Assembly (NCBI GenBank): GCA_002269645.1
Contig: NIVC01000475.1
Location: forward strand, 1 to 64,000
Length of the DNA stretch: 64,000 nt
Source: Macrostomum lignano
Taxonomy: Eukaryota
Direction: 5' to 3'
Positions 2 to 64,000 of the stretch are shown here, in pieces. Position numbers and translations under genes: made by a program. The notes beneath the pieces were generated by a model. That model had not been told where the DNA came from and did not search any database. It saw only the letters and a list, made by a program, of their open reading frames with translations. Each line of letters starts with the position of its first letter. The stretch's first letter is position 1.

Positions 2-3000
2 ACATACAATGTAATGGCCTATACAGAAATCATGTCAATGATCTGGAAGCGGTTAAACGATAAAAACAAGAACTGGCGTCACGTTATAAAGCTTGGTGCT
101 GCTGGACTATCTAATTAAAACTGGCAGCGAGAGGGTGCCCAGCAATGCCAAGGAGAATCTCTTTGTTATTCAATCATTGCGCGATTTCCAATATATTGAG
201 GAGGCCCGCGATCACGGCCTGAATGTGCGCGAGAAAGCTAAGCAGCTGGTCGCTTTGTTGAAAGATGATGAAAGACTGCGGGCTGAGAGGCCAAGGTGTG
301 TACTGCTTGTCGCTGAGCAATCTGTCACTCTTCTCTGTATCACTGGGTACCTCTCCATGTCTCTGGTTATCTCATCTCTATGTCACTGGGTATCTCCATG
401 TCACTGGGTGTCTCCATCTCACTGGGTATCTCTTCTCTGTCTCTGGTATCTCTTCTCTGTGTCACTGGGTATCTCTTCTCTGTGTCACTGGGTATCTCTT
501 CTCTGTCACTGGGTATCTCTTCTCTGTGTCACTGGGTATCTCTTCTCTGTCACTGGGTATCTCTTCTCTGTGTCACTGTGTATCTCTTCTCTGTCACTGG
601 GTATTTCTTCTCTGTGTCACTGGGTATCTCTTCTCTGTCACTGGGTATCTCTTCTCTGTCACTGGGTATCTCTTCTCTGTGTCACTGGGTATCTTCTCTA
701 TGTCAATAGGTATCTTCTCTGTGTCACTGTGTATCTCTTCTCTGTCACTGGGTATTTCTTCTCTGTGTCACTGGGTATCTCTTCTCTGTCACTGGTATCT
801 CTTCTCTGTGTCACTGGGTATCTCTTCTCTGTCACTGGGTATCTCTTCTCTGTGTCACTGGGTATCTTCTCTATGTCAATAGGTATCTTCTCTGTGTCAC
901 TAGGTATCTCTTCACTACGCCATTATGTACATCTTATCGGTCTATAAGCAATCATTTTGTCTATGGGTATTTCTGTCTGTGTAGCCCTATTGCTAGCCCT
1001 ATAGTTCTGCATTATATTGTGTTCTTCACTCTGACAGGCCTTGCTAACCCGCGAGCGCCTGCACCAGGGTGTGGGGCACCACACCGGCTCTGGCAGCGGT
1101 CGCAGCCGCATGCGCGCGCCGGAGTTCGCCGGCAGCGGAGACGACCTGCCAGCCTCGCCCGTGCCGCTGCCGCTGTTACTGCCGGAGGCGGCGGCGGTGT
1201 ACACCAGGAGGCTGAGGACATCGAACTGCAGTTGGCGTTGGCACTGTCCAAGGAGGAGCATGAACAGGAGATGAGGCGAAGAGAGGCCGAAGGACTTAAA
1301 GAGGATATGAAGCTGAGGATGGCGTTGGAGGCCAGCAAGCGGATGAAGAGGTTTGAGTTGGCTCGTGTGCCTGGTTTCTAATTAAGCTGTCAATGAAAAG
1401 CAGTAATCTAATAGCATGGCGATTTCTAAATTTGCAGGAGCGTCAGAAGAAAGGGGCTACAGTTACTCGGCAGAAGGTATTTTGTTTTATTTGATTCATT
1501 CAAACCGTACTGAAAAAGTTGGGGGGTGGCAGCCTACTGAAGTACAGGGGCAGCCTACTGAAGTACAGGGCAGCCTACTGAAGTACAGTGAAGATTACCA
1601 GCCTACTGAAGTACAGGGGGGCAGTCTACTGACAGTGGGGTGGCAGCCTACTGAAGTACATGAGGGGTGGCAGCCTACTGAAGTACATGAGGGGTGGCAG
1701 CCTACTGAAGTACATGAGGGGGCAGCCTACACTGAAGTGCAGGGATATTTTACGTCTGTTCCATTCCACTGTCTATTTTATTTTCTATTTCTTCTTTCTA
1801 TTCCACCTCCACTTGCGCAGTCGGGAACTCTGGTCGACCTGATTGACACGTCGCTGTCGGCGGCTCCGGCCAACGCGCCCGATCCTTGGGCAAACTCCGC
1901 CCCACGGCCACAGCCTCCATTGGCGGCGGCGCCAGCGCCAGAGACCCTGGAATCTTGGCAGCGCCGACCCCTGGGCTACCGGCGCCACCGCTTCCGTGGG
2001 CGCCAATGGCTCTTCGTTTGGTGAGATAGAGATAGCCAAGACTCGCTTGATAGTTAGCTTTAGCCGCTCAGATCCTCAGCTGCTGGGCCACCAGCCTCCC
2101 AGATCTTCAGTTGCTGGGCCACCAGCCTCCCAGATCCTCAGTTACTGAGCCAGCCTCCCAGATCCTCCATTGCTGGGCCACCATCTTCCCATATCCTCAG
2201 TTGCTGGGTCACCAGCCTCCCAGATCCTCCATTGCTGGCCCACCAGCTTCCCAGATCCTCAGTTGCTGGGCCACCAGCCTCCCAGATCCTCAGCTGCTGG
2301 GCCACCAGCTTCCCAGATCCTCAGTTGCTGGGCCACCAGCCTCCCAGATCCTCAGTTTCTGGGCCACCAGCCTCCCAGATCCTCAGCTGCTGGGCCACCA
2401 GCTTCCCAGATTCTCAGTTGCTGGGCCACCAGCCTCCCAAATCCTCAGTTGCTGGGCCACCAGCCTCCCAAATCCTCAGTTGCTGGCCAGCCTCCCAGAT
2501 CCTCAGCTGCTGGGCCAGCCTCCCAGATCCTCAGCTGCTGGGCCAGCCTCCCAGATCCTCAGTTGCTGGGCCAGCCTCCCAGATCCTCAGCTGCTGGGCC
2601 AGCCTCCCAGATCTTCAGCTGCTGGGCCAGCCTCCCAGATCCTCAGTTGCTGGGCCATTCAGCCTCCCAGATCCTCAGTTGCTGGGCCATTCAGCCTCCC
2701 AGATCCTCAGTTGCTGGCCATTCAGCCTCCCAGATCCTCAGTTGCTGGGCCAGCCTCCCAGATCCTCAGTTGCTGGGCCAGTCTCCCAGATCCTCAGTTG
2801 CTGGGCCATTCAGCCTCTCAGATCCTCAGTTGCTGGGCCAGCCTCCCAGATCCTCAGTTGCTGGGCCATTCAGCCTCTCAGATCCTCAGCTGCTGGGCCA
2901 GCCTCCCAGATCCTCAGTTGCTGGGCCATTCAGCCTCCCAGATCCTCAGCTGCTGGGCCAGCCTCCCAGATCCTCAGCTGCTAGGCCAGCCTCCCAGATC

Positions 3001-15149: not shown

Positions 15150-35083
<19,934 letters not shown>

Positions 35084-35931: not shown

Positions 35932-46914
<10,983 letters not shown>

Positions 46915-47669
46915 TCAGCAAACTGCACTTATTGGTACATTTCAATAGCTTATAACTAATCATGCAGTTATCAGATATTTTCATTCCACTCGGTGTCCAA
47001 AAGCTTTTCCAATAGATATGCGCTTTACGAGAATGAAAAAATTAAAAAATTAAAAAATTCACCGCGAAGTTTTCCGCGAAATTGATGCAGTCTAACGTAT
47101 AGTCCTATTGGGACGCCAATAATTTCCGGTTTGAGGAAACGAAACTTTCTAAGAAATGTCTTATTTTCAATTCTGACAACTGCTTTCTGATCATTTTACT
47201 TTTAGTAGTAAAACAAACGTGTTTTAATATAAATTTTTGACAATTTTAATTAATCAGCGCTAATTTCGGAAAGTAGAAAACCAGCTGGCTGTGCACAATA
47301 TTTTTTAAATTTTTTACATATGTGACATAATGACATGAAGAAGTAATGCTATTCTTATGAAACAACAAAATAGAAAAAGTAATGCAAATTATTACGATTG
47401 TTAGTCAAGGAAGCGGTTTAAGAGCAGGAAAGTTACATTAGGAGAGCTTTTTGAGTTTGAACTTTAAAAGTCGAATTGTTCCAGATTTCATTTGAAATAA
47501 ATAATTTATTATAGGAATCAGGCCTTTAAGATTACAGCTCTTTTGATTTTCTTTTGATCTCTCTATAAAAAATAATTCAGAAAAAAAATGAATACTTTTT
47601 TAGTCTAACTAACACGAGAACTACCAAGGGAGAACTCCCCCTTGATAAAGCTTGATAATGCTTTGCTGT

Positions 47670-48331
47670 GCACCTTCTCAAACAAGAATCAAGTCGCCAG
47701 CCCTCCGGACCGTCGAGATATTCAACGATACTGCCAGAAGGTCGGATATTTCCCATAAGAGCCAGTGTACGAGTATTCAGTACACCTTGAGTGCAGTCTT
47801 GCCAAGCCTCAAAATTTCTACATGTGCCTGCACCAGCTCTGACTTCGTTGGTCACTGGCCTTCACCCACGCGGAGCTTCTGGACCTTCAAAAGGAGGCAC
47901 CAGGTGACTATGGACACCCTGATGCGAATTTCTCGAGTATCGTTGATCAAGCCTCGACAATGGGCAAATCACAACTGCTGGACATCCTCAGCTGGTCTCT
48001 CAAGCATTCGTTATAACCCCGACGCCGTCGGCACCTTCAAAAGATGGCACCAGGTGACTATGGAGATCCTGATGCAACTCTGTCAGATTTTTTATTAAGC
48101 TTCAATAATGGGGCAAAACTCAACTGCCAGGTCTCTGAAGCCACCTGTTGAAGGTCCAGAAGCTCCGCCTGGGTGAAAGCCAGTGACCAACGAAGTCAGA
48201 GCTGACGCGCAGTGCTGATTGGCACACAGGAGTGTACTGAATACGCTGGCGCTTATGGGACATATCCGACCTTCCGGCAGAATCTCGACGGTCCGGAGGG
48301 CTGGCGACTTGATTCTTGTTTGAGAAGGTGC
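47670..48331. repeat. Imperfect inverted repeat (fold-back): arms ~47670-47898 and ~48141-48331
   Basis: GCACCTTCTCAAACAAGAATCAAGTCGCCAGCCCTCCGGACCGTCGAGAT is reverse-complemented at 48281-48331. Similarity continues to ...GGAGCTTCTGGACCTTCAA. Confidence 0.9.
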
Positions 48332-48845
48332 GCAAAAAATTTAGCCCGTGTTCTTGAATTTCGTGTGCCTGCGTACAGACGTACAAATTTAAACAAATGA
48401 TAAATTAATGATTTATACTAAAAAACTAATTTAGTCTAACTTGTAATTGATAATACTATATTGAGATATTAAGACTAATATTAAAAAACAAAAACTATAT
48501 AAACTAACTAACTAATTAATATATAAAATAACTAAAACTCCAGTTAGGTACGATCAAGAATATAAATTCAAACAAATTAGTTATTTGTTTTGAGTAACAA
48601 AAGTCTTCATCAAAATATGGTTTATCAATTGGAAGATATGCTAAGATCCAAAAACCCAGGCGCAATCTACAACAAAACATTTTTTCTATGCCACAAAAAA
48701 TCAACCATCACGGAAAATATAAAAATGCAAATAATTATAAGACGTTTGGAGGCCGACAAGGTTTCTTTCTACTCACACGCTTCATTGGCCAGCTGATGGA
48801 AATGCAGTCGCTGCAGTTGACCCGTCTCTCTAGCGTCAAGTAAAG

Positions 48846-51800
48846 TCACTTTAAAGGCCTCTTCAAAGAACGCCCGACTCCTGCAACTTAAATACTCGCA
48901 AATTGAAAAAATTGATTGATTTACTGAATTGAATTTTAGAAAGTGTCAAATATTTGCGTCCTCACCCAGATTTGGTGGGAAAGACTGTCGGCAAAAAATG
49001 ATGTCAAGCAATTTGCTTTGAAATCCGTTGCTATGGACACTAACCTCAGCCTTCAGTCGGTCATTGGTAGTTGCGTGCCGGACGTCGGGTGACTTCACGA
49101 GTAAAATGTGCTGGAGGAACAGCAGTTGGAAGCATCGAAAGTATGATTAAAGCACAGAATTTATGCAGACTCCCAAACCTTATTCAAACTGACCGTACCT
49201 TCCTCAGTTCGTGCACATCGCTAACCAAGACAACGCGCTCTCTTTTGATATCGTTGAAGCACGAGAAGTGGACTTTTACTTGACCTTTTTGAATTCCTAA
49301 AAAGTTTAAAATATTTTACCTGCAATTTTAAGTCAATTTTGAGAGTGCCTGGCCTAAAACAAATAGCGACGTTCGATCGTTTCGTAGAATAGATTATTCT
49401 CGTAAAAATACGCTCGTTGAGTCTAAAAAATTTGGAACTTAAAAAAGTGCTACCATTCCTACTAAAACTTTCCAAGAAACTAACTGCCCCGTCCGTCTAC
49501 TACTAGTGGTCCTTGATCAGACCTGCGGTGGAGGCCTTAGTGTGGATGGCGATCGTGCAGCCGCCATCCATTGGCGCTTCCGCCGGATTCAACGCGATGA
49601 CGTCAATGTTCTTCTTTTCCTCTAAAACACACATTTGTGGAATCATTCTGTACATGAACAGAACAACATGAGTCGATCAGAGTATCACAGAAACTCACTG
49701 TCACTGACGATCTTGTCACTAAACACTGTGCTAAGCAGCCATTCTCGATAGAAAATATCGCAATAGGTGAGCGAGAATGCGAGACGAATCTGAGCCAAGT
49801 TGGTCTGGGTGTACTTAGCTGACGGCCCTGTAGGACAATCACTGGGGGTCGGCACATCCCTGAGTCTGGCTTCCATGGCTTTCTCCATGCTCGCTTTGTT
49901 CTTCTTTGGCACACAGATCACGGACAGCCTGTCGAAGCTGAAAAATTCAAGTGCGTGGGAAACTTCGAGCATGCCTGCAAATCACTATAAGCAACCCTGT
50001 ACAACTAAACTGGATGACTCTTCCTAGGAAGCCTCAATGTTCAATTCGCTTCACTCCTCAGAAACAAAGCGAGGAGCGTAGCGAACATAGAGGCATCCTT
50101 GACTCTTTGCAAATAGTTTCTTCACTCTAATAGATAAACAACATTTCATTTTAAGTAGAGGCGGGTTGACAGTCTTCTTCTATATAACTAAATCTGAAAA
50201 GTTTCTATATATATATACAGTGTATATGTACATAATCCATTTTAAAGGAATTTATCCAACCGATTTTTTTCAAACTTGCACCATTCGATCAGAAATTCTT
50301 GCGAATCGGTACAGTTCTCTTGGCTAAGAGATTGCTTTATTTTAAAGGGATTCAATATTCGAAAAACTGTATTTTCCCTATCTAATTAGTGTATTTTTCT
50401 CGCAGTGAGAGCTCAATACGTCTACAGCCATAGTCTAAACTTCAATTCTTGAGCTGATACAATGAGTTATAAATAGTTATACCTAGCTTGTTAAATTTTA
50501 CAATTTATTATGAATATCTTCGTCTTCAACTTGTTTGAAACCTGAACTGATTGTCTGAATTAAAGCCGGGTGTTACAAAATGTGCATAATCACTTGAACA
50601 GAAATGCCTTGACAACATTGCGCTACGTTTAAAAGGGAATTGCTGAGATGTCAAGGCTTAAGAGGGAATTGCTGAGATGTCAAGGTCTAATGGGAATTGC
50701 TGAAATGTCAAGGCTTAGTGGGGAAATTCCAGAGATGTAAAGTTCTGGGGTGAATGGCTAAGATTTCAAGGCTTGCTGGGGTATAATTGCTTAGAAGTCA
50801 AGGCTTATTGTGGGAATTTTTGAGATATCCATTCTCACTGGGCGGAATTGCTGAGATATCAAGGCTCACCGGGGGGAATTGCTGAGATATCAAGGCTCAC
50901 CGGGGGGAATTGCTGAGATATCAAGGCTCACTATTGGTGGATAATCATTGGTGGAATTGCTGCGATATATAACTGTCTAATGGGTGCTGTTGTAAACTGT
51001 CTAACGAATGCTGTTGTAACTGTCTAACGGGTGCTGTTGTAACTGTCTAACGGGTGCTGTTGTAACTGTCTAACGGGTGCTGTTGTAACTGTCTAACGGG
51101 TGCTGTTGTAACTGTCTAACGGGTGTTGTTGTAACTGTCTAACGGGTGCTGTTGTAACTGTCTAACGGGTGCTGTTGTAACTGTCTAACGGGTGCTGTTG
51201 TAACTGTCTAACGGGTGCTGTTGTAACTGTCTAACGGGTGCTGTTGTAACTGTCTAACGGGTGCTGTTGTAACTGTCTAACGGGTGCTGTTGTAACTGTC
51301 TAACGGGTGCTGTTGTAACTGTCTAACGGGTGCTGTTGTAACTGTCTAACGGGTGCTGTTGTAACTGTCTAACGGGTGCTGTTGTAACTGTCTAACGGGT
51401 GCTGTTGTAAACTGTCTAACGGGTGCTGTTGTAACTGTCTAACGGGTGCTGTTGTAAACTGTCTAACGGGTGCTGTTGTAAACTGTCTAACGGGTGCTGT
51501 TGTAACTGTCTAACGGGTGCTGTTGTAACTGTCTAACGGGTGCTGTTGTAACTGTCTAACGGGTGCTGTTGTAACTGTCTAACGGGTGCTGTTGTAACTG
51601 TCTAACGGGTGCTGTTGTAACTGTCTAACGGGTGCTGTTGTAACTGTCTAACGGGTGCTGTTGTAAACTGTCTAACGGGTGCTGTTGTAACTGTCTAACG
51701 GGTGCTGTTGTAAACTGTCTAACGGGTGCTGTTGTAAACTGTCTAACGGGTGCTGTTGTAACTGTCTAACGGGTGCTGTTGTAACTGTCTAACGGGTGCT

Positions 51801-54366
51801 GTTGTAACTGTCTAACGGGTGCTGTTGTAACTGTCTAACGGGTGCTGTTGTAACTGTCTAACGGGTGCTGTTGTAAACTGTCTAACGGGTGCTGTTGTAA
51901 CTGTCTAACGGGTGCTGTTGTAAACTGTCTAACGGGTGCTGTTGTAAACTGTCACTGTCACTTTTGAAAAGAAAAGTGCTTGCTCGAAAAAATGTTTGGG
52001 ATACGCAAAGCAGGTCAGCCTGGTAATCTATATAACTAAATCTGAAAAGTTTCTGTTTGGATGTATGTAAATAATCCACTTAAAAAATTTAAATTTTTAT
52101 GTCCCGCAAAGCGGGTCTAATTGCTAGTATATACTAATGCTGATATTGCCAATGAAATGCTAATTCACGACCGTAGATAGGCGATAATTGACAACAAATT
52201 TCATCGTTTCCGACTCAGTATAAAAAATATTTTTCTCGACCGAGTTTGTCTATGGTAAAATCCTATTTCCCAAGCGTAAATGAAAAAAGCTGATCTTTGC
52301 GAAATCTGTTTGTTGTTAAATGGGGCTAGCAGCTAAAGCTTGGCGTGCTCTTGAAGAGGCTGGGTGTACCAACTGTTATTATTTTCACGGCTTGACTCAT
52401 CGTCAGTCCAGCTTGGTGTACTTGCGGGCGCAAAACTACCCCCCCCCTCAGACAGGGTCGACCGTGGGCTTCCAAGCTCAGCAAGATCAGCACGAACTCC
52501 CTAACACGTAATATACATGCGGGCAGCGAACATTTGATCTCACTCCAACGTGCTAAAGTGAGAGCCAGTCGACAAGCGGTAAACGCACTTCTAGGCTTAG
52601 GATCCCCAGAGGCATGATGCCTTTCCAGGCGGTCCATTTACCAGATAGGTTCATCTAGCTCATAGGCAGCTGATCTACCTAAATCAGCGGTCATCTACCT
52701 GAAAAACGGGCAGTTGAGTCTCTGGCAGGGACACACTAGAAACTTCAGGGCGAAAACTGTTCCTGTCCCTGAAATCAGTTCAGGGAGCACGATTTTGCAG
52801 TGGAAACCAGCCCTCCAGTGGCCCAGTCGCTCCTCGTGCCACTCACCAGATGTCCCAAACTGCTTTACCATCCAATGCATCAACAGACTTCTTCAGCTGG
52901 AAATATCCGTTGCTGCAGTGGTCTCCGTGCAGGTAGTACGGATGAGGAGCCTTCTCCTCGGCGCTCACGGTGCACACAGTCAGCTGCAGCTGCGAGTGCA
53001 CAGCTGGGTCGATGCCGCTGACGCGAACACTCACGAAGCTCTTGTTGCCATCGGTGGAGCTCCTGCCGAGCAGCAGGCCGCCAACTCTGCCGCTGTCCTT
53101 CTCGATCTCCGACTCGTAGCGAAATCGGTGATACAGAGCCGGCTGCTCCTCGATGGTCAGCGAAGGCGGCTGCAACTCAGCAATGTAGAGGTGCTCAGCA
53201 ATTCCAGTGTTGACGGGGGGTCCGAGAGGCCCGGAAAAGTTCGATTGATACTAGAAACGTTCATAGAGCAGTTGTTGTGGTTTTTCATGCACGCTTTGCT
53301 ATTTTCACATTTTAATTTTTTAGCTTTGTGAAATAATCCACTAATTATAATGCGCTCTGGATGAGGCTTCCATTCTTGAACCAGCTTCCACTACAGGTCT
53401 GCCTGCTTCCACTAAGTTAGAAATATATTGAATACTACTTCTTTTCTGCTCTTTTCTGTGAAAAAACGCAAATGTAAGGCCAGCAGCAATAACACTGCTT
53501 TTGCTGTACGAGATTCCTAACTGACGCTGTTTCTAAAAATAGCTCAGTGCAGTCCCTGTGTGTTCATTTTAAAGCGCTTTTTTGGCACGGCCAGGGAATT
53601 TCCGGGGATTTACTCTCTGCATATTACAAGGAACTTGCAGCTAACTAATGTTTTTAACTTAGATGTCTTTTGTCAACCTAAACCAAAATAAGTAAGTTTC
53701 ATTTCTGATTTCTTACCGGAAAATCAATTTGTATTCTCTTTAAGACTCAAGTTAAAACAATTTTTTTGCTTTGGACGTGCTTGGACTCAACCACAGGGAC
53801 ATCGGGGCGGTGACCAGGGCCCTCTCAGGCCCTGGCTCCTTTGACAGGCATCGTTATCTTCAGGGAATAGAGATCTGCCTCTCCGATGTCGAGAAGGCGA
53901 AGCAAGGGCTATCGGGCGAGCGACCATCCACCCTTCTGGACTCTCCAGAGGGGGGCCGCACTGCGGGCACCGGCACCACTGGATCTCCTGGCAATCACGC
54001 CGCAGCACCAGCTGTCTGTGATTGCCAGGAGCCAGCAGAATGGGCTGCAACGCCTTCTCGCTGTATCTGGACTCCCGGAGCCCCCGATGCCCGGAGCTAT
54101 GTCAAGTTACTTAAAGCTTTCAACTTTTAACTTTAAATGAATCGATTTCATTCTGTGATGTTTCTCACAAATTTAGTTAATAGCTTTCAACAGTTTACTG
54201 GAAATATTAATTTTTTTAGATTTACACAGAGCTACATAAGATTTACACCTGTAAAAAATTTAAAAACTTCATTAAAAAACGTCTTCAAAACCAGTTTTAA
54301 ATGAAAACTTTTGCAAAGAAATCAAAACGAATGAGAAGCAATACTTACGTTTATCCACTGGGCCAT
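48846..54366 (-). CDS. Rel-homology-domain (NF-kB-like) protein, copy A, ~345 aa
   Basis: Exons 54366-54349 (MAQWIN; the least certain), 53250-52847, 49937-49699, 49621-49523, 49296-49199, 49110-48966 and 48880-48846, with consistent phases (1038 nt). LTIEEQP..HRFRYESE, PHPYYLHGDHCSNG, FDRLSVICVPKK, IRLAFSL...VFSDKIVSD, IQKGQVKVHF, LLVKSPD and the basic tail LKRPLK*. Confidence 0.85.
50630..50960. repeat. Degenerate ~30 bp repeats GGGAATTGCTGAGATATCAAGGCTCACC
   Basis: About 9 copies seen. Confidence 0.85.
50970..51950. repeat. Minisatellite, 23 bp unit AACTGTCTAACGGGTGCTGTTGT
   Basis: Homogeneous array in the long intron of RHD copy A. Confidence 0.97.
52027..52127 (+). mobile_element. Minimal (101 bp) non-autonomous Helitron
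   Basis: 5' TC, subterminal hairpin CCCGC-AAA-GCGGG, 3' CTAG, inserted between A (52026) and T (52128), no TSD. Confidence 0.75.
53594..53613 (+). promoter_or_regulatory. Tandem kB-like sites GGGAATTTCC + GGGGATTTAC in an intron of RHD copy A
   Basis: First site is a perfect GGGRNWYYCC match; second has one mismatch. Confidence 0.45.
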
Positions 54367-54526
54367 TGATTATTTATCAAAGCAAACAACAAGGACTACT
54401 AGAATATAACGAAGTGGTCCTAGTGGTCCTTTACAAACAAATTTTCCTAAACTATCCGATTCACTAGTGTCCATCTCCATGCTAAAATATAATAATAAAA
54501 CGAATTTTAATCCGTGGTTGGACCAC

Positions 54527-54547
54527 GGTAAATCCCGGGGAATTCTC
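54527..54547 (-). promoter_or_regulatory. Second double kB-like motif (GAGAATTCCCCGGGATTTACC) upstream of the copy A start exon
   Basis: Near-identical to the 53594 motif, in the opposite orientation. Confidence 0.4.
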
Positions 54548-54565
54548 GTGAACAAAAGTTGTACG

Positions 54566-54572
<7 letters not shown>

Positions 54573-54637
<65 letters not shown>

Positions 54638-54638
54638 C
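54573..54638. repeat. (AG)n microsatellite
   Basis: Read directly. A shorter (AG)n lies at ~38352-38376. Confidence 0.97.
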
Positions 54639-55232
54639 AGGCAAAAAGCGGACACCCGATATGTACACCCGAAAAGTAGCTTCCTGACAGAAATAGCACT
54701 GTACAGTACAGTATACAGATACACTGATGCACAGATCAGGGGCTGTTTGTACAGATGAAGTTGTGCTTTGAACAGCGGGGAAAGAAAGAAAGCACGACAA
54801 GTAGTAGCTGGAAGCAAAACTTTTGGGTGAACCAAAACTTGCAGACGAATTTATTGTACGGTGGAGGAAAAAGTAAAAGAAAAAAACTGAGCAACAAACA
54901 AGAAGACATCTAGATAGGCTGACTCACGTACCCCACCAAAGCCAGCCACTTCAACCCCGCAGTTTAAACGCCTTTTCCACCAACACAGTGGCAATAGAAA
55001 CAATATATTTAGCTCATACTAAATTAGTATTTTATTAAGTACTAAATAAACTTCGCTTATTCAAAACCAAAATCCTATGCATCATTTTTTTCATAGACGC
55101 TTGTACATGTACGATCCATGTATAGAGGCTTTGAATATCAGACTTGAGTCATAATGTTCATAATCGAAGACTGTCTTGAATGAAAGTCAACGCTTATATT
55201 TAAGAGCTTGACGTGAGCTGCTTACGTCATCA

Positions 55233-57750
55233 TTATCGTCGCAGGCTCTTCAGAGAAGTTCGGGATTCTGGCAGAAACACAATACAGAGGCTCTCGCTTT
55301 TGAATCCGTCGCTTTGGACAGTGACCTCGCATTTCATCCGGTCCTTGAAACCTGAACTCCTCACATCGGGCGTCCTCACTAGCAAGAGGTGCTGGAAGCA
55401 AATTAATTTTACTATTAAAAGTGCTCCTGTAATGCAGAACATATAAAAGGGTTTGCGTTTACCTTCTTAACTACCTCGACGTCCGCCACGAACTCAGTTT
55501 GGCTTCCAGTGGCTCTATTGGTAACTGCAAAATGCACCTTTATGTTACTCCTACAAATGCCTGCAAAAGAAGCATTTTAGTTTGAAGGATCAACATTAAA
55601 TCCAATGTAAAAGTAGCTGAAATATCTTGGATAGCTTCGAAACAAGGCGCACCTGTTGTAGGGGTGGCGGTGTGGATCGCCAGCATGCTGCCATCCCCCA
55701 TTAGTACTTCCGCTGGATTCAGACAATCGATCTCAATTCTCTTTTTTAGATCTGAAATTATTTCGAGATATTGATAAAAAATCATCAACTGAGAGTTGAA
55801 GACAGAATCGAGAAACTCACTTTCACCGACGATCTCGTCGCTAAACACCGTACTCAGATGCCATTCTCTACCGAAGACATCGCTGAATGAGAGCGAGAAC
55901 GCCAGACTAATGCGATCCAAGCTTTTGCTTGTGTATTGAGTTGATGTAGCTGTGGGATCTGAAACAGCACAAAGTTGCCAAAGTTGCAAGCAAAAATTTC
56001 TTTTTGATCAAAAACTCTATGAACATCCTTATGTGACGTGGCACACAAAAGTGGAGGGTCGAACCTCGCGCAGGCACACCGAGACCGAAGGCTTGTTTGC
56101 CTTCGTCAGTCAGCAATAGCCACACCCCGTCATCTCCCACCACTCTTAGAGCGCACAGACGTTTCTTTAATGCTGCCATTTCTTTTATGGCGACCAAAGA
56201 CCATGTATACACAAGATGGGCCACAAGGGAATTTAAGATCTATGATGGCGAAATTTTTCACACTATGTTAGAGATTTTACGATTCAAATCTTTATTCAGC
56301 TACTTTTCACAGTAATCTAAATTGAAATATTTAGTTGATAATTAGGAATGCCAAGAGCAGACCAAAAATCAGCCAAAAAGGACTTCAGATTTCTTAATTT
56401 ACACCCAGTCTTAACGAAAGGGAGGCCAACCGAGCAACACTGTCAAATTTTCAAAGTTTATAAATGGAATAAATGGTGTCACGACGCAACATTTGTTCAA
56501 AGGTTTTTAAGTTATAAGCGTACTCAATCTGCATCCGTACGTGAGATAGAAGCTTGCATGGCACTCATGATTCGCTCCGTTAATTAATCAATGCAAGTAG
56601 GTAAAAACGTCTCACAATCTCTGAGCTGTGGAAAGCTTCTACGTCTGTCTTCCAGGCTTTTCTCGATTTCCATTTTCCTTAACTTTGGCACGCAGATGAC
56701 GGCCAGTCTATCAAAGCTGGAAAATGAGAAATCGTTTTCGTCTTGTATTGTTTAAAATGAAACTACCGGAACTGCTAAAAGAAAAGTGAATATACAACTA
56801 TATTACGAAAACCATAATTAGAAGCTTGTTTTAGCTTAGTTTATTGACTCACGTGATCTCCCATTCACCACCAGAATCTCTCAATGCATCAACAGACTTC
56901 TTCAGCTGGAAATATCCGCTGCTGCAGTGGTCCCCGTGCAGGTAGTACGGATGAGGAGCCTTCTCCTCGGCGCTCACGGTGCACACAGTCAGCTGCAGCT
57001 GCGAGTGCACAGCTGGGTCGATGCCGCTGACGCGAACTCTCACGAAGCTCTTGTTGCCATCGGTGGAGCTCCTGCCGAGCAGCAGGCCGCCAACTCTGCC
57101 GCTGTCCATACGGATATCCGACTCGTAGCGATATCGGTAGAACCGAGCCGGCTGCTCCTCGATGGTCAGCGTCGGCGGCTGCAGCTCCTTCAGGCTGAGG
57201 ATCTGGGGCTCCTCTTGAAGCAGAAAGTCTCTGCCAATCACCTGGGTCGTCGTTGCCTTCAAAACGAGTAGAGGCTGGCTTGAACTTTCCATTTTTACAT
57301 CTCGAAACGTCAGCATTGATCGATGCGTTTCAGCGGCATTAAAAAGTAATCTTGCCTACTTGTTACTGACGATGATGCCGAAGGCATTGTACCAGGGTGC
57401 ACGCAACACTCCAGCAAATATTAATGACATTATCACTGGTAACTCTATCTAATCGTCCCTTCAAATATACATCACATGGTGGCACAGCTACATGTAAGCT
57501 ATAAACCCTGATAATTAAGTAGCTGAAGGCCTGTCATGAGTAAGAGTACATTTTTGAATTTTTGAATTTCATAAACCCTAGCCTAGAACAGTTATGCAAT
57601 ATCGAGTCGAAAAAGAGGTCTGGATAATGCATGACCTGTCTTAGATCACATCAAAACAATTAGCTAGCTCTTGGGCAGGTGGAGTATCAACCTGGAAATT
57701 GGTTGAAAACTATTATCCAGCTATTATATTGGCAGGAAGCAACTCACCAT
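55233..57750 (-). CDS. Rel-homology-domain (NF-kB-like) protein, copy B, ~333 aa
   Basis: Exons 57750-57748 (ATG only), 57256-56853, 56716-56616, 55958-55821, 55751-55653, 55560-55463 and 55391-55233 (1002 nt, phases consistent). EEQPARFYRYRYESD, PHPYYLHGDHCSSG, FDRLAVICVPK, NIKVHF and LLVRTPD. Confidence 0.88.
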
Positions 57751-58049
57751 CTTGTCTGTAAATTTCAATAAGAAACAAATTCAATAGATTTCAAGAGCAG
57801 TTGATCTTGATAGTCAGGATAAGGTACCAAAATGCATTTTATGCCCGCAGGGCGAAGTACCTTGTACGATTGTGCAGTGTAGTGGCCGTAGGAGCGCACC
57901 CCACTGCGAGCCTTTCACGAACGCTCGTAGCAAACATTGTCCCTTCTTTCAACTTCTATAAATAAATTTGACGTAAGAATTAAATTCTGGTGTGCACAAC
58001 AAGTGCCGAAGCAACGAACATAATCGCGGCGCAGACGGGCAGACGACCA

Positions 58050-58290
58050 CGTTCGCACGCTGCCAGCGGTTCACCTACCTCGGCGGTCTTGTGCCCCACG
58101 TGAAAGAGGACCTCCGACGGCGCAGAGGACTTGCCTGGGCGGCCTTCCGTTCGATTTGGGTCGTCCTCCAGTCCGAAGCGCTGCCCGACCGCCAGAGAGC
58201 TCGGCTGTGGCCTGGCGGTGGTCGAAACCGTCCTGCATACTAAGCCGAGACGTGGACGCTGACGGCTACGCTAATCACGGCTGCTACGCG
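58050..58290 (+). mobile_element. Degraded LINE (RTE-like) fragment from the region C-terminal to RT
   Basis: FTYLGGLV...DLRRRRGLAWAAF...R, then after a frameshift AVVETVL..AETWTLT. This matches the F.YLG...RI..A..AF...LLYG.ETW pattern of non-LTR ORF2. Confidence 0.7.
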
Positions 58291-58694
58291 CGGCCTTTCG
58301 AGCTGTCGAGAGCGTCGGGAAAGAGGCTCTGTACCTCTGTACAGCTTATAGAATTTCGAGTGCAATTTACAGGTGGATTCTGGGCAGCTGCAGCGCCCGT
58401 CCATCATCCATCATCCATCATCATCGGCAACTTCAACTTGCGGGCCACGTGATCCAGTCCGAGGGCTACTGCCCCCAACCTGTTCAGGACGCCTTGCTGC
58501 ACATCTTGCAGGGCCCGTTCAGGCAGGCTCAGGCCCAAACCCGCCGATACATGAACGTGGACTGCCTGCTGTGCGACGCAGGGGCACCCGACACTGCCAA
58601 CGGGGCGGACTTTCGAATTCCGCTCTCAAGCTCTGCGGCGCGCCATCTGACGCACCCTCACTGTGACCTTACATGCGGGGCCGCGAATTTACCC

Positions 58695-58852
58695 TGCATC
58701 ACCACAGGGATCTCCATCAGCATCACCATTGGAATTAACCCTGCATCACCACAGGGATCTCCATCAGCATCACCATTGGAATTAACCCTGCATCACCACA
58801 GGGATCTCCATCAGCATCACCATTGGAATTAACCCTGCATCACTATTGGGAT
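58695..58852. repeat. About three copies of a 47 bp unit CCCTGCATCACCACAGGGATCTCCATCAGCATCACCATTGGAATTAA
   Basis: Read directly. Confidence 0.93.
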
Positions 58853-59364
58853 CTCTTTTTTGCCGAAAAAGAAATTAAACCGAAATTCACTCGAACTTTA
58901 TTGAAGGATCGATTGATTGATTGATCGAACTTGATTGATTTACCACTACTTGATTGATTGAAGGATTGAAGGAAATCCTGGCTATAAGATTTGTGTTGGG
59001 TAGTGGTAAATAAGCCTGTCATAAAACAGAAGAAGGATTGATTTTTCGTGATAGTGCTTTCTTTAGAAAATCGGCACAATCGAACGCACGATGGTCAAAG
59101 TTACGATCAAATTAATACACGAGCCATTGATACATGAGTCATGCAGAAAATCTTTAGGCAGAAAGAACATCTCCGTGATTTCGAACCAGTGCAAAATAAT
59201 ATTATAATAAGAATATTCAAAACCTGTTTATTAACTATTAAAAAAAATTTAAGGCTAAAAGCCTACTGAGAAATAAAAAACTTTTTTCGCAGCTTATAGA
59301 ATTTCGAGTGCAATTTACAGGTGGATTCTGGGCAGTTGCACAAAGCTTCAGCTCATTAGCTGTG

Positions 59365-61554
59365 TCAAATTGGCCGCGCTCTCTTCACAGCAGTTCCCGA
59401 TTCTGCAACAATCCAAAAGTGTGTTGAAAAATAAATTTTAAAACTCGCAAAGGAAAAACTAAATGTTTGTAACTTTGAAACTTTCTTAAAAACATAACGT
59501 ACGTGGAGGTGTTCCGGTGTTCCACTTAAAGCTGTTGGGCAGATCTCTTAGAAACACAATGCTCCGCTCCTCACTCTTCCATTCATGGCTATGGACAACA
59601 ACCGAACATTTCTGCCGTTCACTTTCACTGACAGTTGCGTGCCTCAGATCGGGAACCCTCACAAGCAGTAGGTGCTGGAAGTTAAACATGTCAAAAGGCA
59701 TTAAAATTACACCACTTAAGGAACGAAAGAACACTACATCCTCATTAAATAGTGTCCTTTCTGTAATACCTAGATACGGTTAGAAGATAAGCATATCACC
59801 TTTTTAACAACGTCGACATCGACCACGTACTCAGTTCGGTCTTCCGTGGCTTTATTGGTGTCAATGAAATGTACCTTTATGTCACTCTTCTGAATGCCTG
59901 AAATTCGAACAGTAGGAATCACGGTATTTATTTTGTGTGAGAATTTCAGCAGAAAATTAGTTATTAAATACTCGTAGTGTTGAAACCGAGCGCACCTGTT
60001 GTAGGGGTGCTGGTGTGGATCGCCAGCATGCTGCAGCCCTCCATTGGCACTTCCACAGGGTTCAGAAAATCGACCTGAATAAGCTTTATTTCCTCTAAAA
60101 ATTGTGAAACGCATTAACTAATAACCAATATTGACTGAGAGTTCAGAACGAAAATGAGACACTCACTCTCACTGACGATCGGGTCGCTGAACACCGTGCT
60201 CAGCTGCCCTTTTCTACCAAAGAAATCGACGAATGAGAGCGAGAACGCCAGTCGAATGCGACCCAAGTTTTTGGTTGTGTATTGAGTTGATGGAGCTGTG
60301 GGACCTGAAACAGCGCCAAGTTTGTACGTAAGCTTCAATAAATTGGACTTCAACGGCGAAAACGAGACGATATGAAAAGATAAATGCTCACAATCTGGAA
60401 GCCGAGGAACATTTCTGCGTCTGGCTTCCATGTGGTCTTCGATGCGCTTCTTTGTGGTTTGAGAGACAGCCAGGCTCTCAAAGCTGAATAGTCAATCATG
60501 AATTTTCACTGCTTTAATTCGAGAATAAAAATCTCACTGTACCATCAAATCTGACAATTAATAAATTAAATATTGTCGCCAACAAATATTAAATTGACCT
60601 TTCATGTGTCAGCCATGAATTTTTACTCACGTGATCTCCCATTCACCACCAGAATCTCTCAATGAATCAACAGACTTATTCCGCTGAAAATATCCGTTGC
60701 TGCAGTGGTCCCCGCGCAGGTAGTACGGATGAGGAGCCTTCTCCTCGGCGCTCACGGTGCACACAGTCAGCTGCAGCTGCGAGTGCACAGCTGGGTCGAT
60801 GCCGCTGACGCAAACTCTCACGAAGCTCTTGTTGCCATCGGTGGAGCTCCTGCCGAGCAGCAGGCGGCCAAGGTGGTAGCTTGCTTGCTGAGACTCGTAG
60901 CGAAATCCGTAGAACCGAGTCGGCTGCTCCTCAATGGTCAGCGACGGCGGCTGCGGCTCTTTCAGGCTGAGGATCTGGGGCTCCGCTTCAAGCAGAATGT
61001 CTCTACCAATCAACGGGGTTGTCGTTGCCTTCAAAACGAGTAGAGGCTGGCTTGAACTTTTGATTTTTACATCTCAAAACGTCAGCATTAATCGATGCGT
61101 TTCAGTTACATTAAAAAGTGCTTAATCGTCACGGACGATGATGCGAAGGCATTTTGCAAGGGTACCCGGACCCTCCAGCCAGTATTTACTACCACTTAGT
61201 AATTCTAGCTAATCGTACTTTTATATGCTTACAAAGTACATTGCATGGTGGCACAGCTAAGCTATAAATCCTGAAAATTCAATAGCTGAAGGCCTGTTAT
61301 AAGTGTGCGAAGGAGGAACAGTGTACCCTTTGACAGTGTGAAGCTTCTGAATTCCAGTAACCCTAGAACATGTAAGCTTTTTCATGTAGCAAATGAGGTC
61401 TGGATAAGGCATGACCTTGTCTTAGGAAATCACGTGAAACAATTAGCTCGCTCTTGGGCAGGTGAAGTTTCAGCCTGGAAAAGTTTCTTTAAAACTGATT
61501 GAAAACTATGAGCTTATTATCTAGCTAGCATTTTGGCAGGAAGCAACTCACCAT
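59365..61554 (-). CDS. Rel-homology-domain (NF-kB-like) protein, copy C, ~345 aa
   Basis: Exons 61554-61552 (ATG only), 61028-60631, 60483-60392, 60304-60167, 60094-59996, 59897-59800, 59674-59503 and 59402-59365 (1038 nt, phases consistent). EEQPTRFYGFRYESQ, PHPYYLRGDHCSNG, IRLAFSL, IQKSDIKVHF and the tail VKRARPI*. Confidence 0.88.
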
Positions 61555-62205
61555 AAATTTTAATGCGAAACAAATTCAATAGAATGTTAGAAGCAGTTTG
61601 GCTTCAATAGTCACAATATACGATATATAAACGATATAAGGTACCAAAATGCATCTTTATGCCCTCAAGGCGAAGTAAGTACCTTGTACGATTGAATGTA
61701 CGAGTGCGAATGTGCAGTGTAGTGGCCAGAGCAGCGCGCCACTTCTATAAATAAACTTGACGTAAAAATTGAACTCTGATGTGCACAAGTGTCGTTTATA
61801 GGAAAGCTTTTGACAGAGAAACGAACATAACCAGTTCTTGCAATACTTCGTGTGTATTTCTTCTATACAACTCAACACAAAATCGATATTTTGTAGTACA
61901 GAATACGTATTATTGGTTCATAAAAGGTCAATTTTATCAGAAACTTAATACACGAACGACATTGTTACATACGTAGAAGATTTTAGGCAAACAAACGGCT
62001 CAATGATTTAAGCAACAATAGGTACGAATCTAATCGAACCAGTTCGAAAAAATTATAGTGAGAGCATTATTAGCCATCTCATTCATTATTTAAAAAAATT
62101 TAAGTCAGTACAGCAATTTTTTACGGCTATTCAAATTTCGGAAACGAGTGCAATTAACAGGTGAATTCTGGGCAGTTGCACGAAGCCTTCAGCACATCAG
62201 CAGTG

Positions 62206-63038
62206 TCAACTTGGCGGCGCTCTCTTTTGAGCAGTTCCGGATTCTGCAACAATGCAAAAGTGTCAAAAGTGTATTTGAAAATTTATTTGAAAAGTCGCGA
62301 AGGACAAAACTAAAGTTTGCTAACTTTGAAACTTTCTTAAAAACATGAGAACGTACTTGGCGGTGTTCTGTGGTTCCACGTAGAGCTGTTGAACAGATCT
62401 CTTTCCAACACAATGCTGAGCTCCTCACTCTTCCCTCCGTGGCTGTGAACAACAACCGAATATTTCCGCCGCTCACTGACATTTGCAGATCTCCAATCGG
62501 GAGTCTTCACCTGAAGTAGGTGCTGGAAGTCAAACGTGTCAAGAGAATTCCAAAATTTAGCTATTTCTTGGTCTAAACACAAAAGCGCCAGACAGTAACA
62601 GCATTAGCTGGTAAATTAAAATGCACAAGAGAGAATTTAATATTACATTCCTTAAGGATGGTACAAACGCTACATCCCCATATACGAGCGTAATAGTCAG
62701 GCAAAATTTTCCTTTCTGTACTATTTAGATACGAGCGTAGAAGCTAAGCATATTACCTTTTTAACTTCTTTGACGTCGGCAACGAACTCTGTTCGGTTTC
62801 CCGTGGTTTCATTGGTTAATGTGAAATGTACCTTTATGTCTTTCTTCTGAATGCCTGAAATTCAAACAGTGTGCCTCACAACTTTTGCATATATTTAGGG
62901 CGATCAATTCTGCCGAAATAACCTTGAAACCGAGCGCACCTGTTGTAGGGGTGGTGGTGTGGATCGCCAGCATGCTTCCGCCTTCCTTTGGCACTTCCGC
63001 TGGGTTCAGACAGTCGACCCGAATAGTCTTATTTTCTT
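62206..63038 (-). CDS. RHD copy D, IPT (dimerisation) exons and tail only; DNA-binding exons not found in the window
   Basis: Exons 63038-62940, 62854-62757, 62522-62357 and 62243-62206, with sizes 99/98/166/38 matching the paralogues. IQKKDIKVHF, LLQVKTPD and the tail QKRAPPS*. Intron similarity to copy C stops at ~63068. Confidence 0.8.
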
Positions 63039-64000
63039 CTGAAAAACGATGAAATGCATTGACTAATGGTAGATTATATATATGGCTTCATTACTTGAGT
63101 AATGATCACAGTCACGAGTGGCGAAGCTTAATAAGCTCACTTAATAGCATAGTTTAATAGCGTTGTTAATGCTCAAACGGAAACGATAGTCTAAAGGATC
63201 AGACCCTTGTACGAGTATATATGGGTTCATAATTCAATAATGATCAGCAGCCACGCTATTAAGTAACGCCAGCGGATTGGTTGATTTAGGAAAAACATTG
63301 GATTACGGGACGTTTAGTTATACCATAGGCTAACGAATAGTGATCAGTGAATAGTGATGGTAGAAAATCAGTCACAAAGTCGAAGAGAGGAATTAGAACT
63401 AGAAAAGTGAAGCAAGAGAAAAACGAAAAGCAAAACTCCTTCAATGAATAGGAAGAATCTGCCAGTGGACAGCCTAAATGGAGTCTCGTCAGCAGAGTTG
63501 GATTTTGTAAGTGAACTGAGTGCCGTGAACCGCGGCTCGGATAGAAATCTTGAAGCTGGATTTTATTGTTTCTGACAAGAAAAGCGTAATTGATTTCCAT
63601 ATTTCAGATTTCAGAGACTGCTGATGAGGCTGCTGCTTGAACTGCGAATTATCGAACTGCATATGCATTAACGTTTAGAAAACTTGTGAACTGTCGAATC
63701 CACCCAGTTGCGACCGCCGTTAGCAACAATTACGATTAGGCTACAACAACAACGGAGCAAATTAAAGAAATCGACACCATAAGTGCGACTGTAATGCATC
63801 AAGCTCAAGTGGATATTATCATATTTTTATATATTATTCATAATATATAATATGCCCTACGTTCATATTATGTTATACGTTCACGTCCATATTACTCGTA
63901 TATGGAAATCAAGGTGGCTTGAAAACTTCATTATGAAGTGCCTTAAAAAGATGTTGTCTATATGACAAGGACCGTTATTGACTGACAGTTCAGAACGAAA

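What the first reader, a model, noticed from the sequence alone, without database searches (positions are those of the whole stretch)
48846..63038. Tandem array of at least four minimal NF-kB/Rel-type genes (RHD + IPT + short basic tail only)
Seen: three complete spliced genes (A, B, C; ~345, ~333 and ~345 aa) and the 3' half of a fourth (D), head-to-tail on the minus strand, with conserved exon sizes (404/398, 239 or 101+138, 99, 98) and phases. Established: LxIxEQP-x-RFRY, PHPxxLxGxxCxxG, F-x-x-L-x-I/V-x-CV-x-K, xRLxF...VxSDxI and QKxDIxVxF are the Rel/NF-kB RHD signature (compare RelA EQPKQRGMRFRYKCE, PHPHELVGKDCRDG, FQNLGIQCVKK, VQKEDIEVYF). They are not the NFAT signature. Inference: all copies stop ~10-25 residues after the IPT domain, so they lack ankyrin repeats and an activation domain and would behave like pre-processed p50-type subunits that could form combinatorial dimers. 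Local expansion of NF-kB genes is unusual, as most invertebrates have few dispersed copies. If the host is a flatworm (inferred from genome style only), it matters more, because to my recollection planarians and parasitic flatworms are generally described as lacking NF-kB.
Basis: partly seen in the sequence, partly recalled or inferred. Interest (0 to 1): 0.92.

Follow-up and report, generated by a model that had tools for sequence, protein, structure and literature searches.

The report
Flatworm tandem array of short Rel-homology genes
The region holds four head-to-tail copies (seven or more on the full contig) of a short, divergent Rel-homology-domain transcription-factor gene of the flatworm Macrostomum lignano, real and probably functional, already in the databases as unstudied "RHD domain-containing proteins", and notable because flatworms are usually described as lacking clear NF-kB.

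Summary
The window is bases 1-64000 of Macrostomum lignano contig NIVC01000475.1. On the minus strand lie three complete GT-AG spliced genes (A, B, C) and the 3' half of a fourth (D). B is identical to GenBank protein BOX15_Mlig012767g1. The array continues outside the window to at least seven genes, and parallel arrays sit on two other contigs.

All copies pass Pfam RHD_DNA_bind (47-62 bits, cut-off 27). An AlphaFold model matches RelA, RelB and c-Rel over both domains. The nearest relatives outside Macrostomum are RelB, Dorsal and c-Rel, not p50/p105 or NFAT. Even so, the M. lignano proteins form their own long-branched clade.

The proteins end at a basic cluster (KRARP in C, KRPLK in A; degenerate in B) that aligns with the Rel nuclear localisation signal. 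They have no ankyrin repeats and no long activation tail.

New points:
- A 297-base block encoding the DNA-recognition part is 92-100% identical in 17 copies, with dS near 0, while the rest is saturated. This is most likely GC-biased gene conversion.
- A, B and C probably receive their AUG from the spliced leader.
- C is a conserved subtype with an altered recognition loop.

Function is untested. Interest is moderate, not 0.92.

The parts
48846..53250 (-). Gene A, last copy of the array. Exons: 53250-52847, 49937-49699, 49621-49523, 49296-49199, 49110-48966, 48880-48846 (stop). Encodes about 340 aa. There is no in-frame ATG in the genome. Intron 1 is 2.9 kb and full of tandem repeats.
   Evidence: GT-AG model and open frame. 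Pfam RHD_DNA_bind 62.3 bits. omega 0.25-0.40 against the other copies outside the homogenised block. The ATG at 53264 is 1 nt out of frame, and the same is true in the homeologous contig.
55233..57750 (-). Gene B, identical to GenBank BOX15_Mlig012767g1 (333 aa). Annotated ATG at 57750-57748, then exons 57256-56853, 56716-56616, 55958-55821, 55751-55653, 55560-55463, 55391-55233. The last intron and about 14 codons are missing relative to C and D.
   Evidence: 100% identity to P0001. An exact spliced mapping reproduces the exons. Pfam 47.9 bits. AlphaFold model pLDDT 83.5 with RelA, RelB and c-Rel as best folds.
59365..61554 (-). Gene C (about 345 aa). Homologue of B's ATG|gt at 61554-61552, then exons 61028-60631, 60483-60392, 60304-60167, 60094-59996, 59897-59800, 59674-59503, 59402-59365. 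Variant recognition loop RFYGFRYESQ and a 3-aa deletion (LAV---SQTTKK).
   Evidence: Model. Pfam 46.6 bits. The same variant loop recurs in both homeologous arrays and the 3-aa deletion in one (L005); the stretch was not aligned in L006. It also appears in P0008.
62206..63038 (-). Gene D, 3' part inside the window. Exons 63038-62940, 62854-62757, 62522-62357, 62243-62206. The four upstream coding exons lie at contig positions 66388-64014, outside the window. The whole gene is an intact 394-aa ORF.
   Evidence: RHD_dimer 21 bits, below the cut-off.
52873..53172 (-). Homogenised 297-300-nt block of gene A. It encodes LQPPSLTIEEQP...KSVDAL, which covers the recognition loop and the first strands of the N-terminal RHD domain.
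   Evidence: 96.7% identical to the block of D, while flanking coding sequence is 55-70% identical.
56882..57181 (-). The same homogenised block in gene B.
   Evidence: 96.0% identical to the block of D. Synonymous differences are 0-3 of 51 sites between any two copies.
60660..60953 (-). The same block in gene C, the most diverged version.
   Evidence: 91.9% identical to the block of D.

Best explanation

**Protein architecture (shown or modelled).** Each gene encodes a 333-405-aa protein made of:
- an N-terminal Ig-like DNA-binding domain, whose recognition loop reads R-F-R-Y-E-S-E followed by a 5-residue insertion;
- an IPT-type dimerisation domain;
- a tail of 10-25 residues ending in a basic cluster (KRARP in C, KRAPP in D, KRPLK in A; B has only KSLRR) that aligns with the nuclear localisation signal of Rel proteins.

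There is no ankyrin inhibitor domain and no long C-terminal activation domain.

**Likely mode of action (inferred).**
- The proteins dimerise through the IPT domain, enter the nucleus through the C-terminal basic cluster, and bind kappaB-like sites.
- Lacking their own activation tail, they would act as cofactor-dependent activators or as competitors and repressors, as p50 or p52 homodimers do.
- The C subtype has lost two base-contacting residues and may be a modulatory partner.

**Evolution of the array (shown).** The array grows by tandem duplication. A 297-nt segment encoding the DNA-reading part is kept almost identical in all copies. The rest, above all the dimerisation domain, diverges under purifying selection.

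**Cause of the homogenised segment (inferred).** GC-biased gene conversion is the most likely cause.

**Start codons (inferred).** For A, B and C the AUG is most simply supplied by the M. lignano spliced leader, which ends in AUG.
For: **Identity of the locus.**
- B is 100% identical to BOX15_Mlig012767g1 of M. lignano.
- The window matches contig NIVC01000475.1 base for base over 45233-64000, with the same numbering.

**RHD membership.**
- Pfam RHD_DNA_bind gives 47-62 bits against a cut-off of 27.
- A family profile against PDB sequences gives RelB 41 bits, c-Rel 37, p65 33, and Gambif1 (the Anopheles Dorsal homologue) 21. No p50, p52 or NFAT appears at E<=10.
- A full HMMER scan of 1.84 billion proteins finds M. 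lignano paralogues first. After them come RelB-like, dorsal-like, c-Rel-like and squid Rel proteins at 57-40 bits. Ankyrin-bearing proteins first appear at about 36 bits.

**Fold.**
- AlphaFold with a 75-sequence alignment gives pLDDT 83.5.
- Foldseek then ranks RelA at 1e-20, followed by RelB and c-Rel, then p52/p50, then NFAT.
- With only M. lignano sequences in the alignment, the C-terminal domain still models at pLDDT 65-81. It matches RHD C-terminal and dimerisation domains at TM 0.67-0.77.

**Architecture.**
- The alignment with mollusc, annelid and insect Rel is colinear up to the KRKRK/KRARP cluster, where the flatworm proteins stop.
- No ankyrin motif is present.
- Intergenic ORFs carry no domain above threshold.

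**Function retained.**
- Frames are intact over 6-8 exons with canonical splice sites.
- omega is 0.25-0.58 for the older pairs outside the block.
- A-type and C-type peculiarities are conserved in homeologous arrays.

**Gene conversion.**
- Synonymous differences are 0-3 of 51 sites inside the block.
- Outside it, A differs from the other copies at 30-46 of 57-72 synonymous sites (Fisher p = 2e-17).
- GC3 is 73-77% inside the block against 52-61% outside.
- There are 17 copies at 92-100% identity on three contigs.

**Spliced leader.**
- The 35-nt leader ends in TTGCATG, and 30% of genes are trans-spliced (PMC8629364).
- The acceptors at 53250, 57256 and 61028 are in phase 0.
Against: - No expression, DNA-binding, dimerisation or localisation data were available here.
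- Only B among A-D is annotated in GenBank.
- The Pfam RHD_dimer model stays below its cut-off, at 14-21 bits against 28.3.
- Several DNA-contact positions of p65 are not kept. Cys38 is Ser, Arg187 is Leu and Lys218 is Gly. This rests on alignment 63 plus residue numbering recalled from the p65 structures.
- The high-confidence model used a Rel-dominated alignment, which biases it towards Rel.
- The tree places the flatworm clade outside both the Rel/Dorsal group and the ankyrin-bearing group, so 'Rel-type' rests on similarity rank, not on phylogeny.
- Young pairs (D-E, D-F) have omega near 1.
- A has no genomic start codon unless it is trans-spliced or has an undetected upstream exon.
Confidence: 0.75

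Rival explanations
1. The copies in the window are mostly decaying duplicates (pseudogenes) of a few functional RHD genes elsewhere in the array.
For: - A, C and D are not annotated in GenBank.
- A and C have no in-frame genomic ATG.
- C has lost Arg and Glu of the recognition loop and three residues of a core strand.
- B has lost its last intron and about 14 codons.
- omega is 0.6-0.8 for C against D, E and F, and near 1 for D against E.
Against: - No stop codon or frameshift occurs in any of 23 coding exons, and all splice sites are canonical.
- omega is 0.25-0.40 for A outside the block.
- The odd features of A and C are shared with intact homeologous copies on other contigs, so they predate the genome duplication and have been kept.
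- A spliced leader ending in AUG removes the start-codon problem.
Confidence: 0.15
2. The near-identity of the 297-nt block reflects a function of the nucleotide sequence itself, such as a structured RNA, a small-RNA target or an exonic regulatory element, rather than gene conversion.
For: - The block has the same sharp borders in all 17 copies, including very divergent A and G types and copies on three contigs.
- The RNA fold z-score is -2.76, and none of 200 shuffles folds as well.
Against: - GC3 is raised by about 20 points inside the block, the usual footprint of GC-biased conversion.
- The copies are tandem and therefore prone to conversion.
- The z-score is modest for a GC-rich coding segment.
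- No Rfam or covariation test was made.
Confidence: 0.12
3. The genes are NFAT or NFAT5-type RHD factors rather than NF-kB/Rel-type.
For: With the alignment limited to M. lignano sequences, the modelled C-terminal domain matches the NFAT1 C-terminal RHD slightly better than the p50, p52 or RelB domains, at TM 0.77 against 0.67-0.73.
Against: - No NFAT appears in the PDB sequence searches at E<=10.
- The loop is RFRYESE, not the NFAT RAHYETEG (recalled).
- Every named outside relative is RelB, Dorsal, c-Rel or Rel.
- The full-length model ranks NFAT below RelA, RelB, c-Rel, p50 and p52.
Confidence: 0.03
4. The repeated copies are an assembly artefact, with collapsed or expanded haplotypes stitched in tandem.
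For: M. lignano is a hidden polyploid with a difficult assembly (PMC10468722 abstract). Three contigs carry parallel arrays.
Against: - Neighbouring copies differ by 6-35% at non-synonymous sites and up to saturation at synonymous sites.
- They have different intron lengths, different repeat insertions and different 5' exons.
- Artefactual duplicates would be near-identical throughout.
Confidence: 0.02

Closest known systems
Class II Rel proteins (RelA, RelB, c-Rel, Dorsal, Dif, mollusc and annelid Rel)
   Same: - The N-terminal RHD domain, IPT domain and NLS are colinear.
- These proteins give the best sequence and fold matches.
- There are no ankyrin repeats.
- The recognition loop keeps R-x-R-Y and Glu.
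   Different: - The flatworm proteins stop at the NLS and lack the 200-400-aa activation tail.
- Identity is only 19-27% to the 69 lophotrochozoan and arthropod Rel/Dorsal proteins aligned, although the Rel proteins of other lophotrochozoans are 43-79% identical to squid Rel.
- They have a 5-residue insertion after the loop and Cys to Ser in RFRYxCE.
- They do not branch inside the Rel clade.
Processed class I NF-kB subunits (p50, p52) and naturally ankyrin-less NF-kB of Nematostella (recalled: Sullivan et al. 2007) and of some choanoflagellates (bioRxiv 10.1101/2021.03.15.435342)
   Same: - The product is RHD-only with no activation domain.
- Several heterodimerising RHD-only paralogues in one genome are reported for the choanoflagellate A. 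spectabilis.
   Different: - There is no glycine-rich region and no GSHGG-type loop.
- Ankyrin-bearing proteins score lower than Rel proteins.
- p50 and p52 are absent from the PDB sequence hits.
The seven divergent RHD factors of the planarian Schmidtea mediterranea (PMC13563047)
   Same: They are flatworm RHD proteins on long branches with no clear NF-kB orthology.
   Different: Their relationship to the M. lignano clade could not be tested, because no planarian sequence was at hand. Tandem arrays and a homogenised block are not reported there.
Second M. lignano RHD subfamily (P0011, P0013, P0015, P0018-P0020), also clustered on contigs of 986, 1110 and 439 kb
   Same: Short proteins of 340-390 aa, no ankyrin repeats, loop HRFRYE.E, same species. 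They are monophyletic with the array (99/100).
   Different: They score only 100-157 bits against the array profile, lack the PHPYYL motif, and do not share the 297-nt block.

Membership tests
Rel homology domain superfamily | N-terminal RHD DNA-binding domain recognised by Pfam PF00554 above the gathering score | tested here: met
   A 62.3, B 47.9 and C 46.6 bits against a cut-off of 27, covering profile positions 1-166 of 169.
Rel homology domain superfamily | C-terminal IPT-type dimerisation domain (PF16179) | tested here: inconclusive
   By sequence it is below the cut-off: C 14.3 and D 21 bits against 28.3. By predicted fold it is met. The domain models at pLDDT 65-81 from M. lignano sequences alone, and it matches p50, p52, RelB and NFAT1 C-terminal domains at TM 0.67-0.77.
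Rel homology domain superfamily | Recognition loop R-x-R-Y-x-C-E with base-contacting Arg, Arg, Tyr and Glu | tested here: inconclusive
   A, D, E, F and G read RFRYESE, with Arg, Arg, Tyr and Glu kept and Cys replaced by Ser. B reads RYRYESD. C reads GFRYESQ, with one Arg and the Glu lost.
Rel homology domain superfamily | Binds kappaB-like DNA as a dimer | not testable with these tools
   Needs EMSA, protein-binding microarray or DAP-seq, plus a dimerisation assay.
Class II Rel/Dorsal | C-terminal transactivation domain after the NLS | tested here: not met
   All models and the GenBank proteins stop within a few residues of the basic cluster.
Class II Rel/Dorsal | Branches within the Rel/Dorsal clade | tested here: not met
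   A neighbour-joining tree of 92 RHD sequences puts all M. lignano proteins in a separate long-branched clade (99/100). The tree is crude, has few class I sequences and no NFAT. Similarity rank still favours Rel.
Class I NF-kB (p105, p100, Relish) | C-terminal ankyrin-repeat inhibitor domain, with or without a glycine-rich region | tested here: not met
   There is no ankyrin motif in any copy. No domain is found in downstream ORFs. The next gene starts 1.2-2.1 kb after each stop codon.
NFAT / NFAT5 | NFAT-type loop (RAHYETEG, recalled) and closest similarity to NFAT | tested here: not met
   The loop is RFRYESE. No NFAT chain appears at E<=10 in two PDB sequence searches. NFAT ranks below all Rel and NF-kB chains for the full model.

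The most novel reading that the evidence does not exclude
The array encodes a self-contained combinatorial dimer network. All subunits share one DNA-reading head, kept identical by gene conversion. Their dimerisation domains have diversified, and a conserved 'C-type' subunit with a disabled recognition loop acts as a natural modulator. With no ankyrin domain of their own, and with an IkB not yet looked for, the network would be controlled mainly by which subunits are expressed. On this reading it is a flatworm-specific rebuilding of NF-kB-like signalling in a phylum whose parasitic members have lost it.
Probability: 0.2. Interest if true: 0.75.

Novelty: new variant of a known kind. Interest (0 to 1): 0.5.

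Why it matters
- A survey of annotated NF-kB proteins found none in Monogenea, Trematoda or Cestoda (PMC11432056).
- Planarians have only divergent RHD factors of unclear role (PMC13563047).
- A free-living flatworm with well over a dozen short RHD genes in tandem arrays shows that the domain was kept, and strongly expanded, in at least one flatworm lineage.
- M. lignano is described as a model for regeneration and stem-cell work with published genome and transcriptome assemblies, and to my recollection RNAi and transgenesis work in it. The roles of these factors in immunity, wounding, regeneration or reproduction could therefore be tested directly.
- The sharp contrast between a homogenised DNA-reading segment and diverging dimerisation domains is a clean natural case for studying concerted evolution within part of a gene.

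Tried and rejected
- **AlphaFold with only six M. lignano sequences.** It gave pLDDT 39.9 and was usable only for the C-terminal domain.
- **Profile search with the search for homologous proteins.** It returned nothing outside M. lignano, because of its word filter. The full HMMER scan was needed instead.
- **Search for the N-terminal exon of D, E and F upstream of A, B and C.** No match.
- **Homology between the upstream region of A and those of B and C.** None.
- **Idea that A's out-of-frame ATG is a homopolymer assembly error.** Rejected, because the homeologous contig has the same C6 run.
- **Literature searches.** Searches for the gene identifiers, and for Macrostomum together with 'Rel homology' or 'Relish', found nothing relevant. 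A five-term search on loss of NF-kB in flatworms found nothing.
- **RNA folding of the block.** It gave only z = -2.76.
- **NFAT and assembly-artefact readings.** Both rejected; see the rival explanations.
Full report
**1. What the window is.**

Gene B translates to a protein 100% identical to GenBank 'hypothetical protein BOX15_Mlig012767g1' of Macrostomum lignano, which UniRef calls 'RHD domain-containing protein'.
- The encoding contig is NIVC01000475.1 of assembly GCA_002269645.1.
- The reverse complement of the fetched locus equals window 45233-64000 base for base, so window coordinates are contig coordinates.
- The rest of the window looks like ordinary animal genome. It holds an ENTH-domain gene, an LTR retroelement and a class C GPCR gene.

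**2. The observation.**

I rebuilt the gene models from the sequence.
- Every exon border is GT-AG, and the frames are open through 6-7 exons.
- The exception is C's second exon, which is 92 nt.
- A spliced mapping of the GenBank protein onto the contig reproduces B's exons exactly.
- D is complete on the contig. Four more coding exons lie beyond the window end, giving an intact 394-aa ORF.

- tblastn finds seven head-to-tail copies between contig positions 48846 and 91044. These are A-D, then E = P0004, F = P0003 and G = P0007.
- Parallel arrays lie on contigs NIVC01000109 and NIVC01001505.
- The copies differ far too much to be assembly duplicates.

**3. What the genes encode.**

- **Pfam.** RHD_DNA_bind is passed by A, B and C with 47-62 bits against a cut-off of 27. 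RHD_dimer stays below its cut-off.
- **PDB sequences.** B alone finds p65, RelB and c-Rel at E about 3e-7, over both domains. A family profile finds RelB (41 bits), c-Rel (37), p65 (33) and the mosquito Dorsal homologue Gambif1. No p50, p52 or NFAT appears up to E = 10.
- **Full HMMER scan.** A scan of 1.84 billion representative proteins gave 101 hits.
  - The top 21 are M. lignano by name or by loop motif. They fall into three subfamilies, one of which forms its own gene clusters on other contigs.
  - Next come proteins named RelB, dorsal, c-Rel and squid Rel at 57-40 bits.
  - Proteins with ankyrin motifs first appear near 36 bits.
- **Tree.** In a neighbour-joining tree of 92 RHD sequences, all M. 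lignano proteins form one clade (99/100) on a long branch. That clade lies outside both the Rel/Dorsal group and the ankyrin-bearing group.
- **Conclusion.** 'Rel-type' is justified by similarity, but orthology to a canonical Rel or NF-kB is not shown.

**4. Structure.**

- With six M. lignano sequences, AlphaFold modelled only the C-terminal domain with any confidence, at pLDDT 65-81.
  - That domain still matches the C-terminal RHD domains of NFAT1, p50, p52 and RelB at TM 0.67-0.77.
  - This is evidence for the IPT fold that does not depend on Rel sequences.
- With 69 Rel proteins added to the alignment, the model reached pLDDT 83.5.
- Foldseek then ranks RelA (1e-20), RelB and c-Rel first, followed by p52/p50 and then NFAT. 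The p65 N-terminal domain alone superposes at TM 0.81 and rmsd 3.3 Å.
- That ranking is partly conditioned by the Rel-rich alignment.

**5. Architecture.**

- The alignment with squid, brachiopod, annelid, fly and Daphnia Rel is colinear. It runs from EQP..RFRY through PHPxxL, the LGIQCV strand, the linker and the IPT domain, to the KRKRK cluster of Rel.
- The flatworm proteins have KRARP, KRAPP or KRPLK at that cluster (B only KSLRR) and then end.
- They have no ankyrin motif, and intergenic ORFs hold no domain.
- Distinctive features:
  - a 5-residue insertion after the recognition loop;
  - Ser in place of the loop cysteine;
  - an extra N-terminal coding exon of 42 codons in D, E and F.
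- Several p65 DNA-contact positions, numbered from memory of the p65 structures, are kept. These are the two loop arginines, Tyr, Glu and the Lys of IQK.
- Others are not kept, namely the linker Arg and one Lys.

**6. Are the copies alive?**

- Outside the block described below, omega is 0.25-0.40 for A against the others. It is 0.46-0.58 for B against the others. For C against D, E and F it is 0.49-0.79. The older copies have therefore been under purifying selection.
- Young pairs such as D and E are near 1, with few differences.
- C looks odd. It reads RFYGFRYESQ, has a shortened loop, and has lost three residues of the ICV strand.
  - The same loop recurs in intact copies of both homeologous arrays, and the strand deletion in one of them.
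  - C is therefore a maintained subtype, not a random wreck.
- A has no in-frame ATG. The nearest one, at 53264, is one base out of frame, and the homeologous contig shows exactly the same arrangement. This is not an assembly slip.
- The M. lignano spliced leader ends in ...TTGCATG, and 30% of genes are trans-spliced (PMC8629364).
  - The acceptors at 53250 (A), 57256 (B) and 61028 (C) are all in phase 0.
  - A leader-borne AUG would therefore start all three proteins.
  - For B it would give precisely the deposited sequence M-ATTTQ....
  - The 3-nt 'ATG' first exon in the GenBank model of B may thus be the leader's ATG placed on the genome. This is inference.

**7. A homogenised block.**

- All paralogues share an invariant stretch of protein.
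- At the DNA level, a 297-nt segment of the large exon (LQPPSLTIEEQP to KSVDAL) has 0-3 synonymous differences in 51 sites between any two copies.
- Outside it, A differs from the others at 30-46 of 57-72 synonymous sites (Fisher p = 2e-17).
- The block occurs 17 times at 92-100% identity in the loci I fetched from three contigs.
- GC3 is 73-77% inside the block and 52-61% outside it.
- The simplest reading is recurrent GC-biased gene conversion confined to the part that reads DNA.
- A nucleotide-level function is a minority alternative. The RNA fold z-score is only -2.76.

**8. Known or new?**

- The proteins are public, but I found no paper that discusses them.
- Msweli et al. 2024 list zero NF-kB proteins in Monogenea, Trematoda and Cestoda. 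They did not sample free-living flatworms.
- A 2026 Development paper reports seven divergent RHD factors and no clear NF-kB in Schmidtea.
- RHD-only proteins and multiple heterodimerising RHD paralogues are known from cnidarians and choanoflagellates.
- I therefore rate this as a new variant of a known kind, with moderate interest.

**9. Verdict.**

- The core interpretation is supported.
- The 'p50-type' analogy and the immune role are untested.
- The novelty claim is toned down.

Noticed in passing
window 52873-53172, 56882-57181, 60660-60953 (and 14 further copies in L002-L006): A 297-nt coding block is 92-100% identical in all 17 copies seen. Its dS is near 0 and its GC3 is raised by about 20 points, while the rest of the genes is diverged to saturation.
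   Followed up: yes
window 53220-53264: An ATG 14 nt upstream of A's large exon is one base out of frame. One extra C in the C6 run at 53220 would join it to the ORF. The homeologous copy on NIVC01000109 has the identical arrangement.
   Followed up: yes
window 50635-51953: Intron 1 of gene A holds a 23-nt unit repeated 42 times (50970-51953, 97% matches). Beside it is a 31-nt unit repeated about 10 times (50635-50932).
   Followed up: partly
window 57980-59305: A GC-rich insertion of about 950 nt lies between C and B. It contains a 47-nt unit repeated 3.6 times (58685-58855). The start of C's 3' flank occurs twice, at 59364-59305 and 58392-58357. Its ORFs have no Pfam domain above threshold. 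An older gene prediction (P0008) fused C, this insert and B.
   Followed up: partly
window 55233-55391: Gene B lacks the last intron and about 14 codons present in C and D. The junction retains the CAG of the old acceptor, so a genomic deletion fused the last two exons in frame.
   Followed up: partly
window 54573-54637: An (AG)32 microsatellite lies in the B-A intergenic region.
   Followed up: no
window 24337-27863: An LTR-type retroelement lies on the minus strand. It has a gag-like ORF with a CCHC zinc knuckle and an 806-aa ORF with reverse transcriptase and RNase H.
   Followed up: no
window 35932-43783: A class C (metabotropic-glutamate-like) GPCR gene lies on the plus strand. It has ANF_receptor, NCD3G and 7tm_3 domains in successive exons.
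   Followed up: no
window 93-947: An ORF with the C-terminal half of an ENTH (epsin-type) domain sits at the start of the contig.
   Followed up: no
other M. lignano contigs (proteins P0011, P0013, P0019, P0020 = PAA90847-PAA90851, and homeologues): A second, more divergent subfamily of short RHD proteins has neighbouring accession numbers on contigs of 986, 1110 and 439 kb. This points to at least one more RHD gene cluster in this genome. A third, single type (P0021) also exists.
   Followed up: partly
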